Shown here in pieces: positions 17,004-26,590 of a DNA stretch of 64,000 bases. A program made the position numbers and the translations under genes. Position 1 is the first letter of the stretch, and every line of letters starts with the position of its first letter. The stretch covers positions 1,798,001-1,862,000 of the forward strand of contig OZ249442.1 of NCBI GenBank assembly GCA_965235115.1, written 5' to 3'. A model generated the notes under the pieces. That model was not told the origin of the DNA and searched no databases. It saw only the letters and a list, made by a program, of their open reading frames with translations. The DNA is from Laetmonice hystrix (taxonomy: Eukaryota).

Positions 17004-18426
17004 ATGCCACCACCATCAACACTGCGGTCACCACCCGTACACCCGGTGGGGACTGAGAAGGCCACCTTTGGTATGTCCTGATTCTGGTTCCCTGAAGCCA
17101 TCTTTGGTGCAGCACCAGGAGTAATTCGCACCAGAGTTGGCTTCGCAGGGGGAACCACTGCAAACCCAACATACCAACACATGTAAGATTTTACATTATG
17201 TTTTTTGTCTGTATAATGTCTGCATGTCTGTATGAAAGTTTTGATAATTACACAAAAATGAAGATACAATAAGGGATATGTTAAATGATAGCAGAATTGG
17301 CATTGAATGTTTTTATAGCTGATGTTAAAAACAGGATAAAAACTGATATGTTTGCAATGGATCCTGGGACTGAATATTAGCTTTTTAATTATTACAACAT
17401 AAAACTTCTTTTCTCAGCATCTATTTGTTGTAAATGAATGACAACAATTAAATGTCTTTTTCCTTGTTTCTTTAAGCGGGAACCATACAGAAACTATTGA
17501 CATTGACTTTGACCCATCCAACACTGACTACAAGACACTCCTTAACATGTTCTGGAAGAATCACAACTCCACCTCCCACAGCAGCCCCCAGTACATGTCG
17601 GCGATATTCTACCACAATGAAGACCAACAAAAATTGGCTGAAACAAGTAAGGAAGAAGAGCAGGTCCACCTTTCACAACCAATCAGAACCCGGATCAGCT
17701 CAGCTGGACAGTTCTTCAATGCTGAAAGGTGAGTTTTACAAAGTTTACATTGTTATCAGCATGATTGACAGAGAAAACAAATGTTATGTTTTAAAATGAG
17801 TGTAAACCTAATGATTGATCTGACGTGTCAAACACTGTTAATTTGTTTGTTTCTCAGTTATCACCAGAAGTACATGTTGAGGCGTCACGGTGATCTGTTG
17901 AATAGTCTGAACTTGACAGACGAGCAGCTGATCGACTCCCATGTGGCAGCAAGACTCAACGGTTATGTCGCCAGCAATGGAAAGCTAGAACTGTTTGAAA
18001 AGGTATAGCAAAATTGATTTGTATTGTTCTAGATTTTGGTTAAGAAACTGAGAAAAACGTTGTCATACTATTTCAAGGCATCAGTTCACCACGATAAACG
18101 TTAATGACACTAGGGGGCACTGTGTGTTCAATGATGTTACGTTGTTATTCACCAGGTGGCGACACCATATTGAGTTTTTTTTCGTCTCCTAGCAAACACT
18201 GAGTGCGTCATTTTCTGGTATTAAAACCAGAAACATATTTTGCACTTTATTTAACTAAATTACACCTCACGATTAACATGTTATAAAACAGTATTATTTT
18301 TGTGTAGCTGATGAAGAAGGGTACTGAAGTACAATATGTTCCTTACAGGAGGTGCCGACGTTTGGACTCAATGCCCGCCAGGTGGCCTACCTACGACGTA
18401 AACTGGTGTGTCAACGTAATCTTTAA
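17004..18426 (+). CDS. MSRA: Peptide methionine sulfoxide reductase A, selenocysteine form (UGA at catalytic position), about 217 aa
   Basis: Exons 17004-17182, 17477-17728, 17858-18002, 18349-18426 (GT-AG, phases 2/2/0, 654 nt). Protein MPPPSTLRSPPVHPVGTEKATFGMS[TGA 17079-17081]FWFPEAIFGAAPGVIRTRVGFAGGTTANPTYQHIGNHTE...MFWKNH...QYMSAIFYHNEDQ...FFNAESYHQKY...AARLNGY...KLVCQRNL*. TGA aligns to the Cys of the G-C-F-W motif and the rest is intact. Confidence 0.93.
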
Positions 18427-19205
18427 CAGATCACTGGCACAGTGACACACAGTCTCGTCCCTAGACCCCACTTATCTGACCAATACACCCTAACAGATCA
18501 GTGGCACAGTGACACACAGTCTCGTCCCTAGACCCCACTTATCTGACCAATACACCCTAACAGATCACTGGCACAGTGACACACAGTCTCGTCCCTAGAC
18601 CCCACTTATCTGACCAATACACCCTAACAGATCACTGGCACAGTGACACACAGTCTCGTCCCTAGACCCCACTTATCTGACCAATACACCCTAACAGATC
18701 ACTGGCACAGTGACACACAGTCTCGTCCCTAGACCCCACGTATCTGACCAATACACCCTAACAGATCACTGGCACAGTGACACACAGTCTCGTCCCTAGA
18801 CCCCACTTATCTGACCAACAGATCACTGGCACAGTGACACACAGTCTCGTCCCTAGACCCCACTTATCTGACCAATACACCCTAACAGATCACTGGCACA
18901 GTGACACACAGTCTCGTCCCTAGACCCCACGTATCTGACCAATACACCCTAACAGATCACTGGCACAGTGACACACAGTCTCGTCCCTAGACCCCACTTA
19001 TCTGACCAACAGATCACTGGCACAGTGACACACAGTCTCGTCCCTAGACCCCACTTATCTGACCATACACCCTAACAGATCACTGGCACAGTGACACACA
19101 GTCTCGTCCCTAGACCCCACTTATCTGACCAATACACCCTAACAGATCACTGGCACAGTGACACACAGTCTCGTCCCTAGACCCCACTTATCTGACCATA
19201 CACCA
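18424..19205. repeat. 67-bp minisatellite starting at the MSRA stop codon
   Basis: taacagatcactggcacagtgacacacagtctcgtccctagaccccacttatctgaccaatacaccc, about 12 copies; the first TAA is the stop. Confidence 0.95.
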
Positions 19206-19534
19206 TGTACCAGATATCTTCCACCCACATATAGTCACGGATGCCTTTCCTGCAGTATGTCCTGGGAGTATGTTATCCCATAAGTATGTAGAAGGATGGT
19301 AGCAAGACTAGAAGACAGGATTTACAAGCAAATGTAGGCCCTGTATAGGTCGAGGCCCATAACAGGAAAACGAGGGCTAGAAAGCAGACCTGTTCTACCT
19401 AATTTTCAGAAATGTACAATTTAGATTTAACGATGCGTATTTGTTCCACCCTTATTTATTTTACATTATTGGTCGGTTTTTGTAACGATGTCTTCAGAAG
19501 CCTGCCGTGTCTAGTTCTGTACTTCGCCGTTAGG

Positions 19535-19602
19535 GGGCCTTCATGAAGTACGTTGGTAAAACCAAGGTGACTTGTGTCCAGCGGACGGAAAATATTTGGT
19601 CA
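19535..19602 (+). ncRNA. SECIS-like element (type II) in MSRA 3' UTR
   Basis: ATGAA core (19543-19547); helix II gtacgttgg pairs with ccagcggac (8/9); apical AAAA (19558-19561); mini-stem caag-GTGA-cttg; 3' core GGAA (19587-19590). Spacing fits ATGA-N11-12-AA-N27-28-GA. Folded by hand only. Confidence 0.75.
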
Positions 19603-19764
19603 CAGTAACACGGAACTAGACACGTGATCTTGTGGCTACATCTCAGTAACACGGAACTAGACACGTGATCTTGTGGCTACATCTCAGTAACACGGAACTA
19701 GACACGTGATCTTGTGGCTACATCTCAGTAACACGGAACTAGACACGTGATCTTGTGGCTACAT
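19603..19764. repeat. 41-bp repeat x4 directly after the SECIS
   Basis: cagtaacacggaactagacacgtgatcttgtggctacatct. Confidence 0.9.
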
Positions 19765-20787
19765 TGTTTTGCAATATAACAGTTTCTTTCGACCTCTAAT
19801 TCTCATTTGGATTTAATTCATTAAAAAGCTTGATTATCAATAACAATCTCCCCCCCCCCCCAACGTTCGAATACGAGTACTTGCATACATATCAGATTAG
19901 GAAGAACATGACACAAGCCGAGTCAGGGTATAGTGTATCATAGAACCAGTATGTAGCGGGCACACATGATATAGTACCGGTATACTGGATACAGCCCATA
20001 TATAGCCTTGATGCGTGCGAATAACGTTAAGAAATCGTTTTATGTGTACATATATCCGTAGTGTAGATCGAAGCTTTACACCCTTTGAAGATTTACATAA
20101 AAAGCTGATGGTAGCGAATAGGTGTGTTCATTGTTGTGGAAGTAGGGATTTCAAATCTAGCGGTTTCATCTTCAGGTTTTAAAAAGTTATAAACAAATAA
20201 ACATCAATGTTGGGGTTTTCTACTGGATTTCACCTTTTATGGGGAGTTGAAGCGTTTTGGGGGCACTGCCTAGGGGTACGCTTTTGGGAAAAAAATGAAG
20301 CCAGAAAACTGTGGGGGGAAGTAACCGAATTTTAGGGAGGAAGCCCCCCTCCCCCTCCAAATACTAAAACAAGCATGGGGGAAGCTCTGATTATATGCAG
20401 CAGTAAAGTCGACCAGTTTTGAGTCTACCATACAGAACAATGTCCTCACTCATGCTGCCACGCATGCAGCGAGATTCATCATTCTCAGCGTATTACAATT
20501 ATAATCGGGCTACATGTGCGTATTACATTATAATCAGGCTACATGTGCGTATTACATTATAGCTATTGTATATATTATATCTTATCAATATTAAAAGTAA
20601 TTCGATGTAATATCCGTTTAGGTTCGAATATTTATTCATTTATAGTACTTCGGTGTGGGTTGATACTTTGTAATCCTTGAAGCTTTTGTTTCTTCGTTGT
20701 AGTTTCTCAATGTAAGGTATAAACCCAGAACTCTTTATCACCAAGGAAACTACATTGTATATGTGTGTAGGCTCGTAAATATCCCTC

Positions 20788-22035
20788 ATGGGCACAGCTG
20801 TCAAGGTAAAATGTAGAACAGCGTATCAGGATATCCATTATGGGTACAGCTGCCAAGGTATAATGTAGAACAGCGTATCAGAATATCCATTATGGGTACA
20901 GCTGCCAAGGTATAATGTAGAACAGCGTATCAGAATATCCATTGGGTACAGCTGCCAAGGTATAATGTAGAACAGCGTATTAGAATATCCATTGGGTACA
21001 GCTGCCAAGGTATAATGTAGAACAGCGTATCAGAATATCCATTGGGTACAGCTGCCAAGGTATAATGTAGAACAGCGTATCAAAATATCCATTGGGTACA
21101 GCTGCCAAGGTATAATGTAGAACAGCGTATCAGAATATCCATTGGGTACAGCTGCCAAGGTATAATGTAGAACAGCGTATCAGAATATCCATTATGGGTA
21201 CAGCTGCCAAGGTATAATGTAGAACAGCGTATCAGAATATCCATTATGGGTACAGCTGCCAAGGTATAATGTAGAACAGCGTATCAGAATATCCATTATG
21301 GGTACAGCTGCCAAGGTATAATGTAGAACAGCGTATCAGAATATCCATTATGGGTACAGCTGCCAAGGTATAATGTAGAACAGCGTATCAGAATATCCAT
21401 TATGGGTACAGCTGCCAAGGTATAATGTAGAACAGCGTATCAGAATATCCATTATGGGTACAGCTGCCAAGGTATAATGTAGAACAGCGTATCAGAATAT
21501 CCATTATGGGTACAGCTGCCAAGGTATAATGTACACCGATCGTTCTGAGACCGTTACCGTATTGATACGATTGTACACCTATCGTTCTGAAACTGTTACC
21601 CTATTGATACGATTGTACACCTATCGTTCTGAGACTGTTACCGTATTGATACGATTGTACACCTATCGTTCTGAGACCGTTACCGTATTGATACGATTGT
21701 AATCCTATCGTTCTGAGACTGTTACCGTATTGATACGATTGTACACCTATCGTTCTGAGACTGTTACCGTATTGATACGATTGTACACCTATCGTTCTGA
21801 GACTGTTACCGTATTGATACGATTGTACACCTATCGTTTTGAGACCGTTACCGTATTGATACGATTGTACACCTATCGTTTTGAGACCGTTACCGTATTG
21901 ATACGATTGTACACCTATCGTTTTGAGACCGTTACCGTATTGATACGATTGTACACCGATCGTTCTGAGACTGTTACCGTATTGATACGATTGTACACCT
22001 ATCGTTTTGAGACCGTTACCGTATTGATACGATTA
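20788..22035. repeat. Adjacent 49/52-bp (to about 21533) and 42-bp minisatellites
   Basis: gggtacagctgccaaggtataatgtagaacagcgtatcagaatatccattat, then tacacctatcgttctgagactgttaccgtattgatacgattg. Confidence 0.95.
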
Positions 22036-22344
22036 TTTACCGAGATATGTAGAGTAAGTGGTAAGAAGTATTTTATCGAGATATAGAGTAGAGTAAGATA
22101 AGCAGAAGGCTGTTAACGGTTGGATGCACATTGTGGATCACTGTCGCAAGCGCACAAGGATCGAGACAGGACCGAAGCGGAATATCTGCTATCAGGGTTC
22201 AGAATGGTTGGTGGTGTGTCCACTTCACGAGAGTCGTCCGCCCCCGACCATACGGGACACTGTCCGTTTGTACAACCTCACACCCCCACCCCGCCTACAC
22301 TTACTGCTGTTTTCTAAATGTTTTCACAATTTTCAATTCTCAAC

Positions 22345-24185
22345 ATGTACCGATCGCCAGTATGTATAATTTTACCCCACCCAACATGTACCTATCGCCA
22401 GTTGTATGATTTTACCCCACCCAACATGTACCTATCGCCAGTTGTATGATTTTACCCCACCCAACATGTACCTATCGCCAGTATGTATGATTTTACCCCA
22501 CCCAACATGTACCTATCGACAGTATGTATGATTTTACCCCACCCAACATGTACCTATCGCCAGTATGTATGATTTTACCCCACCCAACATGTACCTATCG
22601 ACAGTATGTATGATTTTACCCCACCCAACATGTACCTATCGCCAGTATGTATAATTTTACCCCACCCAACATGTACCTATCGCCAGTTGTATGATTTTAC
22701 CCCACCCAACATGTACCTATCGCCAGTATGTATGATTTTACCCCACCCAACATGTACCTATCGACAGTATGTATGATTTTACCCCACCCAACATGTACCT
22801 ATCGACAGATGTATGATTTTACCCCACCCAACATGTACCGATCGACAGTATGTATGATTTTACCCCACCCAACATGTACCTATCGACAGTATGTATGATT
22901 TTACCCCACCCAACATGTACCTATCGCCAGTATGTATAATTTTACCCCACCCAACATGTACCTATCGCCAGTATGTATGATTTTACCCCACCCAACATGT
23001 ACCGATCGCCAGTATGTATGATTTTACCCCACCCAACATGTACCTATCGCCAGTATGTATGATTTTACCCCACCCAACATGTACCTATCGACAGTATGTA
23101 TGATTTTACCCCACCCAACATGTACCTATCGCCAGTATGTATTGTACCCCACCCAACATGTACCTATCGCCAGTATGTATGATTTTACCCCACCCAACAT
23201 GTACCTATCGCCAGTATGTATGATTTTACCCCACCCAACATGTACCTATCGCCAGTATGTATGATTTTACCCTGGCACCCAACATGTACCGATCGCCAGA
23301 TGTATGATTTTACCCTGGCACCCAACATGTACCTATCGCCAGATGTATGATTTTACCCCACCCAACATGTACCTATCGCCAGTATGTATGATTGTACCCC
23401 ACCCAACATGTACCTATCGCCAGTATGTATGATTTTACCCCACCCAACATGTACCTATCGCCAGTATGTATGATTTTACCCCACCCAACATGTACCTATC
23501 GACAGTATGTATGATTTTACCCCACCCAACATGTACCGATCGACAGTATGTATGATTGTACCCCACCCAACATGTCCCGATCGCCAGTATGTATGATTTT
23601 ACCCCACCCAACATGTACCTATCGCCAGTATGTATGATTTTACCCCACCCAACATGTACCTATCGCCAGTATGTATGATTTTACCCCACCCAACATGTAC
23701 CTAGATCGCCAGTATGTATGATTTTACCCCACCCAACATGTACCTATCGCCAGTATGTATGATTTTTTACCCCACCCAACATGTACCTATCGCCAGTATG
23801 TATGATTTTACCCCACCCAACATGTACCTAGATCGCCAGTATGTATGATTTTACCCCACCCAACATGTACCTATCGACAGATGTATGATTTTACCCCACC
23901 CAACATGTACCTGTCGCCAGTATGTATGATTTTTTACCCCACCCAACATGTACCTATCGCCAGTATGTATGATTTTACCCCACCCAACATGTACCTATCG
24001 CCAGTATGTATGATTTTACCCCACCCAACATGTACCTATCGCCAGTATGTATGATTTTACCCCACCCAACATGTACCGATCGCCAGATGTATGATTTTAC
24101 CCCACCCAACATGTACCTATCGCCAGTATGTATAATTTTACCCCACCCAACATACATACCTGTCGCCAGTATGTATGATTTTTTA
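22345..24185. repeat. 41-bp minisatellite
   Basis: atgtacctatcgccagtatgtatgattttaccccacccaac, about 45 copies. Confidence 0.95.
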
Positions 24186-26590
24186 CCCCATAATATAAAT
24201 ATCGCCAGTATATCTTTGTTTTATGAAGTGTTTCTACGTTCGTTCACCCTGATCTCCTGGGTCCCACTCAGTAGCAGTTTCTTACATGGAGAGGTTCAAA
24301 CGGATAGTGTTCTGTTGTACAGTAGATTGTAGGTTGAATTCGATTGTTGCATAATGTCTTCTCATAGACTAACGAACACGAAACACAAATCTTTCACCAT
24401 AGAGTGGCTCAACAAGTTCTCATGGACAGATCTGGTCAGTAAGCTGATAGAGTCGATCTTGTATTTGTAGAGATACAAAACGGCCGATGGGTAAGAACAA
24501 GAATGGAAACGATGGAATAGGATGTGTAAATTATTTTAAGGATGGACTAAAATGACAGAGCCCATTGCGATACTCTCAATCTACAACATCGATACAGCCT
24601 ATAAACATATAGGATCTGTATTCGCGTATATTTCTGTTATATGAGCATACTCCTACTAGATCTATAAGGTAATCATTGTAAATCCCGATGTAATGCTATA
24701 ATAGACTTTGGTAGACTGGCTTTACAATTACTTATGTCCTCGTTGCATGTAAAATTACTTTCAATAAAAACTACGCACTGCACCCCCAACTGTGTGGGTT
24801 TGTTTTGGTCGTTACTTTGTGTCTGTCCTATGTGATAGGCCTAGCAATACTCCTATTGCCAAAGCTACACAAATGAGAGAATTTTAAAACGCGCAGAATG
24901 GAATGCTATAGCGCACATAGCCAATCATTTCAAATGAAGTTTTGCCATTACCTTCAGCCATTGAGTCCAATAAATTTAGCTCAATTCCTTCTACAAAGCA
25001 GATTCAGGTGATTTTTCAAACGAAGCGGGCACTTCGACATCGTCACGGCTGGCGGCCATTTTAAATAAACAAAGGGAGCAGCTATTATCTAAGAAGGGGC
25101 CTGGATCTCGGGCCATCATGGAGGAGAGCTTGGCTCCTTGTGTGATGGTATGCTCCCCTACTGGCCTTTAGTGCGCAAGCGCATTAGGACTAACAACATT
25201 GCCGGCAACGAAAATCAAACTGCTCGGTTCGCATTTTCAAACGTCTGATTTATAGAGGTCGGGTGGGCGGGTTCTCGAGGCCCACATTTCTGGGTTAAGG
25301 GGCCAGAAACAAAGGACATATAAAATATGTCTTTAATAAGTCATTTGGGATGATATAGATTGTCTTTAACCTCTACACTTCTGATGACACGATCCACAGA
25401 ATGAATATAAATATTAATTTACGGTTTTCAACGCAATTTCATCGTAATTTAGAGGCCTAATTAATCCAGAAAATGCTAATAGAAGAAACTTTGCTGTTGG
25501 CGTGACATATAGCATCAGCGTTAAATTTTTTTATGAAAGGCACGTTATATGTGTCGGTTTTACAATGTAGGTGCGACTTTAGTTCCTAATTTACTTGGCC
25601 CAACGATGCCCATCTTGGCACATCTCATAACGTCAACGTTTATGCGTGGTACAGGACACTTGTCCCGAATTTCGCACAGAGCTATTCATGCCGTTCTAGA
25701 GCGAAAAGCTTAGTAAGCTGTAGGCCGAGATGAGAGGAAATAGGCCTACACACATTTGAAATCAATTTAAATCTCTAGTTCTCAGACCGGCGGAAGAATA
25801 TGTTACGGTGAAAAGTTACGTCACGTGACGCGGTGACCAGAATGTTTGTCTACCATTGTTGGATTGCTGATCACAGACTTGAACGTAGCGTCTGAAGGTA
25901 TAGGTCTATAGAATAAATGAAAATAGATAATTAGGGAACAGCAGGTTTATTCATTACCCCCCCCCCCCCCCACACACACACACCCCAAGTCAAAGGAAGG
26001 GCGCATGCATAGCAATTCCGTCATTTCTTGTGTACCTAACTAACTCAAAATAGACAACTCTGTCTGAAAATACTTTGTACCTTGAAGTTTTAGCGATGAA
26101 AGAGGCGAAGAGTCTAGCCAAAATCTTTAGGGTCGAGAGTATTTGTGAGAAAACCACATTGTTAGGGATCAAAAATATAAATTTCTATTTTTGTTTGTCA
26201 GTGAAGAGTCTGATTCTAAGTAGCCTAGTCATGTAAGCTTGCTCAAGAAGGCAGCAGAATTATTTAGTGATGAAGACTATTTTTTAAGTGTCCCGTGCCA
26301 ACGCCTTTGTTACCTTGGTTTCTGGTTCAGTTATACAGTTCTAGTTTATGGACATAATTATCAATAATGCCTGTCCTAAAGTGGCCCGAGGATCGATCCC
26401 CCCCTCCCCTTCCCCGTTAACTAACGCGGCTACTATCGGAACCTCACGACGCGATCGTAAATAATTACGAGTTTCCAACTAGCGCGTGGTCCGTCGATTC
26501 CCACACTCTAACGCCGTCAGCCATTACACATGTGCACGCTATAAATTTGGTTGCTTACATGGGCAGGGATGAAATAACATTGAATATTAC

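What the first reader, a model, noticed from the sequence alone, without database searches (positions are those of the whole stretch)
19506..19624. Type II SECIS-like hairpin on an extended stem completed by a repeat unit
Seen: ATGAA...gtacgttgg-t-AAAA-c-caag(GTGA)cttg-tgt-ccagcggac-GGAA, giving the non-Watson-Crick core, an 8/9 helix II, apical As and a GNRA-capped mini-stem. In addition cgtgtctagttc (19506-19517) is the exact reverse complement of gaactagacacg (19613-19624), which belongs to the first unit of the 41-bp repeat; the next three units offer the same pairing partner. Inference: this is the recoding element for the MsrA UGA, and the repeat may lengthen or compete for its basal stem. 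Helix I directly under the core looks weak by hand.
Basis: partly seen in the sequence, partly recalled or inferred. Interest (0 to 1): 0.72.

Follow-up and report, generated by a model that had tools for sequence, protein, structure and literature searches.

The report
SECIS hairpin of a selenocysteine MsrA gene
This hairpin is very probably the ordinary 3'-UTR signal (SECIS) that lets the neighbouring methionine-sulfoxide reductase A gene read its UGA as selenocysteine; the only unusual point is that one arm of its long lower stem lies in the first unit of a small tandem repeat.

Summary
On the + strand at 19543-19590 there is an AUGA...GA core, an 8/9 helix II, an unpaired AAAA 11 nt after AUGA and a GUGA-capped mini-stem. 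A 12-nt exact inverted repeat brackets it (15 bp counting one G-U), and its 3' arm lies in each of four identical 41-bp units.

The hairpin lies 1116 nt after the stop codon of an intact four-exon MsrA gene whose catalytic codon is TGA, as in its orthologues. My SECIS scan recovered four verified SECIS elements (two MsrA orthologues, two GPx genes of this genome). It found only this site on either strand of the 64-kb window. Shuffled sequence gives about 0.005-0.01 such sites per kb.

Rfam SECIS_1 aligns it end to end but weakly, at 13.6 bits against a cut-off of 35. The verified SECIS elements also miss that cut-off (24-29 bits). The genome has tRNA-Sec genes. No canonical poly(A) signal lies between the stop codon and the hairpin; the first is at 19820.

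I obtained no RNA evidence and no close-relative copy. The stem-lengthening idea is plausible; the competition idea is untested. This is a new member of a known kind, of low interest. The scan had already noted the gene itself (s1-337656).

The parts
17004..17182 (+). Sec-MsrA exon 1. ATG at 17004. In-frame TGA (Sec) at 17079-17081 in the motif GMS-U-FWFPE.
   Evidence: PF01625 match with one TGA inside. Translation. Orthologues carry TGA at the same position.
17477..17728 (+). Sec-MsrA exon 2 (GNHTET...AE).
   Evidence: PF01625 match at 68 bits. AG/GT splice sites read. 46-60% identity to orthologues.
17858..18002 (+). Sec-MsrA exon 3 (YHQKY...ELFEK).
   Evidence: tblastn of orthologues runs to 18002. 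Splice donor GT at 18003.
18349..18426 (+). Sec-MsrA exon 4, the C-terminal tail EVPTFGLNARQVAYLRRKL..., with stop TAA at 18424-18426.
   Evidence: tblastn of the C-termini of P0033 and P0034 hits 18343-18417. Splice acceptor AG at 18347-18348.
18424..19204 (+). 67-bp x 12 minisatellite that fills the first 780 nt of the presumed 3' UTR.
   Evidence: Tandem Repeats Finder.
19506..19520 (+). 5' arm of the 15-bp distal clamp (extended lower stem).
   Evidence: the repeat finder I1-I4. Pair probabilities 0.72-1.0.
19534..19538 (+). Helix I, 5' strand (weak: 4 of 5 pairs with 19599-19603).
   Evidence: Rfam SECIS_1 alignment.
19543..19590 (+). SECIS proper. AUGA 19543-46. Helix II 19548-56 with 19578-86. 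AAAA 19558-61. Mini-stem 19563-66 with 19571-74 and GUGA loop. GA 19588-89.
   Evidence: Constrained dG -12.9 kcal/mol.
19599..19603 (+). Helix I, 3' strand.
   Evidence: Rfam SECIS_1 alignment.
19610..19624 (+). 3' arm of the distal clamp, inside unit 1 of the 41-bp array.
19603..19764 (+). 41-bp x 4 perfect tandem array. Every unit carries the same 15-nt partner for the 5' arm.
   Evidence: Single copy in the genome.
19820..19825 (+). First canonical poly(A) signal (ATTAAA) after the stop codon. Presumed end of the 3' UTR shortly after it.
   Evidence: Hexamer scan. Inference only; no RNA ends were seen.

Best explanation
The hairpin at 19543-19590 is the type II SECIS element of the selenocysteine-MsrA gene at 17004-18426.

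Proposed mechanism, from established knowledge of eukaryotic Sec decoding:
- In the spliced mRNA the hairpin lies about 1.1 kb after the stop codon and about 1.7 kb after the UGA.
- Its AUGA/GA strands form the kink-turn of tandem sheared G.A pairs that SBP2 binds.
- SBP2 brings eEFSec carrying Sec-tRNA to the ribosome at UGA 17079-17081, so selenocysteine is inserted at the catalytic position instead of termination.

Inferred for this element: the weak helix I is continued, after an internal loop, by a 15-bp clamp (19506-19520 with 19610-19624). The clamp closes the SECIS domain and probably shields it from the two flanking minisatellites. The 3' arm of the clamp was later amplified together with its 41-bp unit. 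The extra three copies are most likely neutral.

Shown here: the sequence features, their rarity, the intact Sec gene, and the Sec machinery in the genome. Inferred: transcription through the site, SBP2 binding, and any role of the clamp.
For: 1. The gene needs a SECIS.
- It has four exons with GT-AG introns, and TGA at the catalytic site of the PMSR domain.
- Eight orthologous contigs from other organisms have TGA at the same place: L006, L010, L011, L012, L013, L014, L020-L024.

2. The genome decodes Sec.
- It has three tRNA-Sec genes at 79.9 bits, with anticodon TCA.
- It has two Sec-GPx genes with SECIS elements.

3. This is the only candidate.
- Loose and strict scans of 18000-26000 (+) give no rival inside the mRNA.
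- The strict scan of both strands of all 64 kb gives this site alone.

4. It is rare by chance.
- Shuffles give 0.005 sites/kb at dG <= -12.9, so about 0.007 are expected in a 1.4-kb UTR.
- Rfam's E = 3.1 covers 172 nt of search space x 4227 families. By my arithmetic that equals about 0.006 for one family over 1.4 kb of one strand.

5. Positive controls behave the same way.
- The scan recovers 4 of 4 verified SECIS elements, at dG -9.1 to -12.4.
- They share the layout: one unpaired base after AUGA and one before GA, a 9-12 bp helix II with one mismatch, a 3-4 nt A-rich 5' bulge and a mini-stem.

6. No AATAAA or ATTAAA lies between the stop codon and the site. ATTAAA follows at 19820.

7. The clamp forms with probability about 1.0 in the ensemble. 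Its one mismatch is a G-U only on the + strand RNA. A verified GPx SECIS (L019) shows a comparable distal clamp.
Against: - Rfam SECIS_1 gives no hit at gathering. It gives none at E <= 10 on 600 nt. It reaches only 13.6 bits on an 86-nt slice, lower than the verified elements (24.2, 28.0 and 28.8 bits).
- Helix I is weak.
- The unconstrained MFE does not form the core. A 7-bp helix, 19519-19525 with 19545-19551, sequesters AUGA with probability 0.35. Helix II forms with probability 0.28. The SECIS-constrained fold is 4.1 kcal/mol above the MFE.
- The 81-nt hairpin alone is not unusually stable (z = -0.86).
- There is no RNA evidence. The only runs holding the stretch are genomic DNA, because introns are covered and there are no splice joints.
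- No close relative was available, so no covariation could be assessed.
- My scan criteria were fixed after I had seen the candidate.
Confidence: 0.8

Rival explanations
1. This is a chance SECIS-like hairpin. The real SECIS would be elsewhere, either a non-canonical form that my scans miss or one further downstream. Alternatively this allele has no working SECIS.
For: - The Rfam score is low, 13.6 bits against a gathering score of 35.
- Helix I is weak.
- The MFE prefers other pairings.
- There is no RNA or conservation evidence.
- Several orthologue mRNA contigs (L012, L014, L021, L022) show no SECIS recognisable by my scan. So either the scan has blind spots or those contigs are truncated.
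Against: - The expected number of chance sites of this quality in the 3' region is about 0.007-0.03.
- No other candidate lies in 18427-26000, even with GTGA cores and no requirement for the A motif.
- The gene is intact.
- 4 of 4 verified SECIS elements pass the same scan.
Confidence: 0.1
2. The inverted repeat is a structural by-product with no RNA role. It could come from template switching at the birth of the 41-bp minisatellite, or be the ends of a small foldback insertion. The SECIS would then work through its own helix I and II alone.
For: - Inverted repeats of 12 nt or more are about 25 times commoner in this window than in shuffles. The region is full of minisatellites.
- The four units are 100% identical, so the array is young.
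- Complementarity stops abruptly at 15 nt.
Against: - The sequence is single-copy in a 627-Mb genome, so it is not a MITE family.
- The arms sit almost symmetrically around the core, 22 nt and 20 nt away.
- The sole mismatch is G-U on the mRNA strand.
- Bracketing by chance is about 1% by my arithmetic.
- A similar distal clamp is seen in a verified GPx SECIS.
Confidence: 0.45
3. The four repeat units act as alternative 3' partners. By register choice or copy-number variation they would tune SECIS folding and hence Sec insertion.
For: - There are four identical 15-nt partners.
- The 301-nt MFE pairs the 5' arm with the last unit rather than the first.
- Depth of the repeat unitigs differs between runs, at about 3.5x to 6.6x of the flank depth. 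This is a weak hint of copy-number differences.
Against: - Nothing was tested.
- Co-transcriptional folding favours the nearest unit.
- The distal partners only enlarge an already large internal loop.
- Unitig depth is a poor measure, as the tool itself says.
Confidence: 0.07

Closest known systems
Eukaryotic type II (form 2) SECIS element, Rfam RF00031 SECIS_1
   Same: - AUGA...GA kink-turn core with one extra non-Watson-Crick pair (A.G).
- 9-bp helix II.
- Unpaired A-run 11 nt after AUGA.
- Mini-stem above the A motif.
- Position downstream of a UGA-containing ORF.
- End-to-end alignment to the model.
   Different: - It scores 13.6 bits, below the gathering score of 35.
- Helix I is only 4 of 5 bp.
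- The lower stem resumes after an internal loop of about 13 nt on the 5' side and 6 nt on the 3' side, as a 15-bp clamp whose 3' arm is part of a tandem repeat.
SECIS elements of Sec-MsrA orthologues (L013:1093-1159 and L024:3252-3297, found here) and the Sec-MsrA genes of marine invertebrates reported by Jiang et al. 2012 (PMC3473315)
   Same: - Same gene family, with UGA at the catalytic position.
- The SECIS begins AUGAAG.
- A-rich 5' bulge and mini-stem.
- Similar constrained stability.
   Different: - There is no sequence homology beyond the core motifs.
- In the orthologues the SECIS lies 21 nt (L024) and 340 nt (L013) after the stop codon. Here it lies 1116 nt after, of which 780 nt are a minisatellite.
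SECIS elements of two Sec-GPx genes in the same genome (L018 minus strand, L019 plus strand)
   Same: - Same organism and the same architecture.
- L018 even shares CUUCAUGAAG.
- L019 has a distal clamp of about 10-12 bp below a large internal loop.
- Both also fall below Rfam's gathering score.
   Different: They serve different genes and score higher in Rfam (28-29 bits). No tandem repeat supplies their stems.

Membership tests
Eukaryotic SECIS element (type II) | 5' AUGA and 3' GA able to form tandem sheared G.A pairs (kink-turn core). | tested here: met
   AUGA 19543-46 and GA 19588-89, flanked by A19547 and G19587.
Eukaryotic SECIS element (type II) | Helix II of about 9-12 bp directly above the core, placing the A motif 10-13 nt after AUGA. 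| tested here: met
   8 of 9 pairs, 19548-56 with 19578-86. AAAA starts 11 nt after AUGA.
Eukaryotic SECIS element (type II) | Unpaired AAR motif, followed by an additional mini-stem (type II). | tested here: met
   UAAA is unpaired in the constrained fold. Mini-stem of 4-6 bp capped by GUGA.
Eukaryotic SECIS element (type II) | Helix I below the internal loop. | tested here: inconclusive
   Only 4 of 5 bp directly below the loop. A 15-bp clamp further out forms with probability about 1.0.
Eukaryotic SECIS element (type II) | Lies in the 3' UTR of an mRNA with an in-frame UGA at a Sec position. | tested here: inconclusive
   Same strand, 1116 nt after the stop codon of an intact Sec-MsrA gene, with no canonical poly(A) signal in between. 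No RNA evidence was obtained.
Eukaryotic SECIS element (type II) | Reaches Rfam SECIS_1 gathering score (35 bits). | tested here: not met
   13.6 bits. But the verified SECIS elements of this genome (28.8 and 28.0 bits) and of an orthologue (24.2 bits) also fail, so the threshold is not diagnostic here.
Eukaryotic SECIS element (type II) | Binds SBP2 and supports Sec insertion at UGA. | not testable with these tools
   Needs a reporter assay, 75Se labelling or EMSA.
Selenocysteine-containing MsrA (PF01625) | PMSR domain with UGA aligned to the catalytic Cys, conserved as UGA in orthologues. | tested here: met
   The Sec form in marine invertebrates is described in PMC3473315.
Sec-decoding organism | tRNA-Sec gene and other selenoprotein genes with SECIS in the genome. 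| tested here: met
   Three tRNA-Sec genes at 79.9 bits with anticodon TCA. Two Sec-GPx genes with SECIS.

The most novel reading that the evidence does not exclude
The 41-bp minisatellite is more than a passenger. Its units would offer alternative 3' arms for the 15-bp clamp, so copy number or register choice would change how well the SECIS core is presented. The competing 19519-25/19545-51 helix hides AUGA when the clamp slips. Alleles would then differ in selenocysteine insertion efficiency for MsrA. That would be a repeat-length-tuned recoding element.
Probability: 0.06. Interest if true: 0.55.

Novelty: new member of a known kind. Interest (0 to 1): 0.25.

Why it matters
It completes the annotation of a selenoprotein gene that standard pipelines truncate at UGA. 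It also shows that Rfam's SECIS_1 threshold misses every SECIS examined in this genome, including two verified GPx elements. Selenoproteome annotation in this lineage therefore needs dedicated tools.

The clamp made with a minisatellite unit is a small curiosity. It would matter only if repeat number were shown to affect Sec insertion. Otherwise this is an expected element of a gene class known in marine invertebrates since 2012.

Tried and rejected
- **Rfam.** Gathering search over the whole window gave nothing. The E-value search on 601 nt gave no SECIS, only chance snoRNA and mir-27 fragments.
- **RNA evidence.** The single run search returned three runs of one sample. On laying they proved to be genomic DNA, with introns covered evenly and no splice joints. 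They say nothing about expression or the RNA 3' end.
- **Exact look-up of a UTR ORF.** The 44-aa ORF at 19412-19543 was looked up to fish for transcript contigs. It is not on record.
- **Metagenome pattern scan.** A scan for the apical part of the hairpin gave three AT-rich microbial chance matches that are not homologous.
- **Closer relatives.** The best orthologues are 60% identical or less at protein level, and cluster look-ups gave no names. No orthologous UTR alignment or covariation test was possible.
- **Own covariance model.** I aligned four verified SECIS elements, but MAFFT misaligned the 3' GA strands and no hand-curated alignment can be submitted. I dropped this.
- **Decayed copy in intron 3.** A by-eye resemblance at 18126-18146 (ATGATGTTACGTTG) is not significant: 58 of 300 shuffles score as well.
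- **Stop codon reading.** I first read the stop as FEKV-TAG at 18006, possibly with a 30-nt micro-intron. I rejected this once exon 4 (18349-18426) matched the orthologues' C-termini.
- **Inverted copy of the unit.** The 5' arm is not part of an inverted copy of the whole 41-bp unit. Similarity ends at 15 nt.
- **Repeat family.** The hairpin and the array are each single-copy in the genome.

Full report
**Observation.**
- AUGA lies at 19543-19546, followed by A19547.
- The 9-nt 5' strand of helix II (19548-19556) pairs with 19578-19586 at 8 of 9 positions, with one G-U and one A.G mismatch.
- After U19557 come four unpaired A (19558-19561).
- A CAAG/CUUG mini-stem follows, capped by the GNRA-type loop GUGA (19563-19574).
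- After the 3' strand of helix II come G19587 and GA 19588-19589.
- The 12-mer 19506-19517 is the exact reverse complement of 19613-19624.
- The repeat finder extends this to 15 nt at 14/15. The mismatch, T19518 against G19612, is a G-U pair only on the + strand RNA. The same arm is present in all four units.
- The array is 19603-19764: 41 bp, 4.0 copies, 100% identical.

**Context: the gene.**
- The window is G000:C7:1798001-1862000. A PF01625 search of the genome finds two MsrA exons in the window, one containing a TGA.
- From the sequence, the three-frame translation and tblastn with orthologues, I derive a four-exon gene with GT-AG introns: 17004-17182, 17477-17728, 17858-18002 and 18349-18426.
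- TGA 17079-17081 sits in GMS-U-FWFPE, the catalytic position.
- Exon 4 encodes the helical C-terminal tail seen in orthologues and ends in TAA at 18424-18426. This corrects my first reading of a stop at 18006.
- Orthologous contigs from other organisms all have TGA at the same position, both genomic ones (L006, L010, L011, L020-L024) and spliced mRNA ones (L012, L013, L014).
- Sec-MsrA is a selenoprotein already described as widespread in marine invertebrates (Jiang et al. 2012, PMC3473315).
I re-derived the gene model but could not test expression.

**Context: Sec machinery.** The genome has three tRNA-Sec genes at 79.9 bits with anticodon TCA. It also has at least two Sec-GPx genes. UGA-to-Sec decoding is therefore available, and this gene must have a SECIS.

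**Is this hairpin the SECIS?**
- It lies on the coding strand, 1116 nt after the stop codon and about 1.69 kb after the UGA in the spliced mRNA. Of the intervening UTR, 780 nt are a 67-bp x 12 minisatellite that starts at the stop codon.
- No AATAAA or ATTAAA occurs between the stop codon and the hairpin. The first, ATTAAA, is at 19820, 56 nt after the 41-bp array.
- A crude pattern scan of 17900-26000, an energy-based scan with A/GTGA cores and a scan without any requirement for the A motif all put this site first. None gives a rival inside the mRNA. The only other hit, at 18311, is in intron 3.
- The strict scan requires: ATGA...GA; at least 7 of the first 8 helix II positions paired; an unbranched fold; an unpaired AA 8-13 nt into the stem; and dG <= -10. 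It finds this one site on both strands of the 64-kb window.
- The same scan on 60 dinucleotide shuffles (7.68 Mb) gives 0.010 sites/kb, and 0.005/kb at this site's dG of -12.9 kcal/mol. About 0.007 are therefore expected in a 1.4-kb UTR.
- The scan is not blind. It recovers four verified SECIS elements: two from MsrA orthologues (L013, L024) and two from GPx genes of this genome (L018, L019; searches show the GPx exons upstream). Their dG values run from -9.1 to -12.4.
- The layout of those elements is very similar to this one. One unpaired base follows AUGA and one precedes GA. Helix II has a single mismatch. There is a 3-4 nt A-rich 5' bulge and a mini-stem. Three of the four also begin AUGAAG.

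**Rfam.**
- SECIS_1 gives nothing at the gathering score, and nothing at E <= 10 on 601 nt.
- On an 86-nt slice it aligns the element over all 64 model positions at 13.6 bits, E = 3.1. That E-value covers 172 nt of search space x 4227 families. For the single hypothesis 'SECIS_1 in 1.4 kb of one strand' it corresponds to about 0.006 by my arithmetic, in line with the shuffle estimate.
- The gathering score of 35 bits is not diagnostic here. The two GPx SECIS elements are the best hits in the whole genome at 28.8 and 28.0 bits, and the L013 orthologue SECIS scores 24.2.
- The score of this element is nevertheless the lowest of the set, and I count that against it.

**Thermodynamics.**
- The 81-nt hairpin alone is not unusually stable (z = -0.86).
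- Its unconstrained fold uses the 3' strand of helix II with 19525-19534 instead.
- In the 146-nt context the MFE (-50.4 kcal/mol) keeps the upper six pairs of helix II, the mini-stem and the clamp. It pairs 19519-19525 with 19545-19551, which hides AUGA.
- The SECIS-constrained fold is 4.1 kcal/mol higher. Nearest-neighbour models give no credit for the sheared G.A pairs or for SBP2 binding, so this is a mild objection.

**The extended stem.**
- The clamp has pair probabilities of 0.72-1.0. It makes the 146-nt and 301-nt folds significantly stable, at z = -2.6 and -4.1.
- Exact inverted repeats of 12 nt or more with a gap of 120 nt or less occur at about 12 independent loci in this window, against 0.48 raw hits per shuffled window. 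An inverted repeat that brackets this particular element within about 40 nt has a probability of roughly 1% by my arithmetic, and that estimate is post hoc.
- The hairpin and the array are each single-copy in the 627-Mb genome, so this is not a MITE family.
- Complementarity does not extend beyond 15 nt, and the 5' arm is not an inverted copy of the whole unit.
- A verified GPx SECIS of the same genome (L019) also shows a distal clamp of about 10-12 bp below a large internal loop. A discontinuous long lower stem is therefore ordinary here.
- The simplest history is that a single 41-bp segment carrying the 3' arm was recently amplified to four identical copies. The first copy still closes the stem and the other three are spare partners.
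- I give about 45% to the clamp having no RNA role at all, and about 6-7% to real competition or tuning by the spare units.

**What is missing.**
They are genomic DNA, with even cover of introns and no joints. I therefore have no evidence on transcription through the site or on the poly(A) site.
- Those runs show a 17-nt deletion at 19401 and SNPs at 19343, 19395 and 19398, but no difference in 19418-19632. About 1.2 SNPs would be expected there, so this is not significant.
- No close relative could be found, so there is no covariation test.

**Verdict.** The SECIS reading is well supported at the level of sequence, structure and context (confidence 0.8), but it is not demonstrated by RNA or by conservation. 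The idea that the repeat lengthens the stem is plausible. The idea that it competes is unsupported. This is a new member of a known kind and of low general interest.

Noticed in passing
window 18424-19204: A 67-bp x 12 minisatellite starts exactly at the MsrA stop codon and fills the first 780 nt of the presumed 3' UTR. Its length sets most of the stop-to-SECIS distance. The window holds at least eight further long minisatellite arrays between 10 and 28 kb.
   Followed up: partly
G000:C1:30982686-30982749 (-) = L018; G000:C2:43516957-43517022 (+) = L019: These are two Sec-GPx genes of this genome, with the NVAS-U-G motif in L018 and the WNFxKFLID exon upstream of both hits. Their SECIS elements are the best SECIS_1 hits in the genome, yet score only 28.8 and 28.0 bits, below Rfam's gathering score of 35. 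Rfam at gathering would therefore annotate no SECIS here.
   Followed up: partly
G000:C1:40495451-40580032: About 35 hits to the tRNA-Sec model at 39-46 bits, below the cut-off, spaced about 2.1-2.5 kb apart on one strand. This looks like a large tandem cluster of a long-variable-arm tRNA gene, not tRNA-Sec. The true tRNA-Sec genes are three identical copies on C1, C2 and C7 at 79.9 bits.
   Followed up: no
window 19519-19525 with 19545-19551: A perfect 7-bp helix (GUACUUC/GAAGUAC) can sequester the AUGA core. It has probability 0.35 in the ensemble, against 0.28 for helix II. It may be noise, or an alternative conformer.
   Followed up: partly
window 19395-19417: All three DNA runs of one sample differ from the reference by a 17-nt deletion at 19401 and by C>T at 19395 and 19398, in the UTR just upstream of the clamp. 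This is an allele or strain difference.
   Followed up: no
L012, L014, L021, L022 (orthologue mRNA and metatranscriptome contigs): These Sec-MsrA transcripts carry the in-frame TGA but show no SECIS recognisable by my scans or by Rfam in 0.3-1.5 kb of 3' sequence. Either the contigs are truncated or their SECIS forms are atypical.
   Followed up: partly
P0037 (Logan contig, orthologue): The called protein reads MSWFWFPE, with W where the others have TGA. The cause may be a gene caller using a code that reads TGA as Trp, or a true TGG. Not examined.
   Followed up: no
G000:C18:22562217-22562603 (L001): A second MsrA gene of the genome, a much stronger PF01625 match at 169 bits with one TAG inside, probably an intron. 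It is presumably the Cys-type paralogue. Not examined.
   Followed up: no
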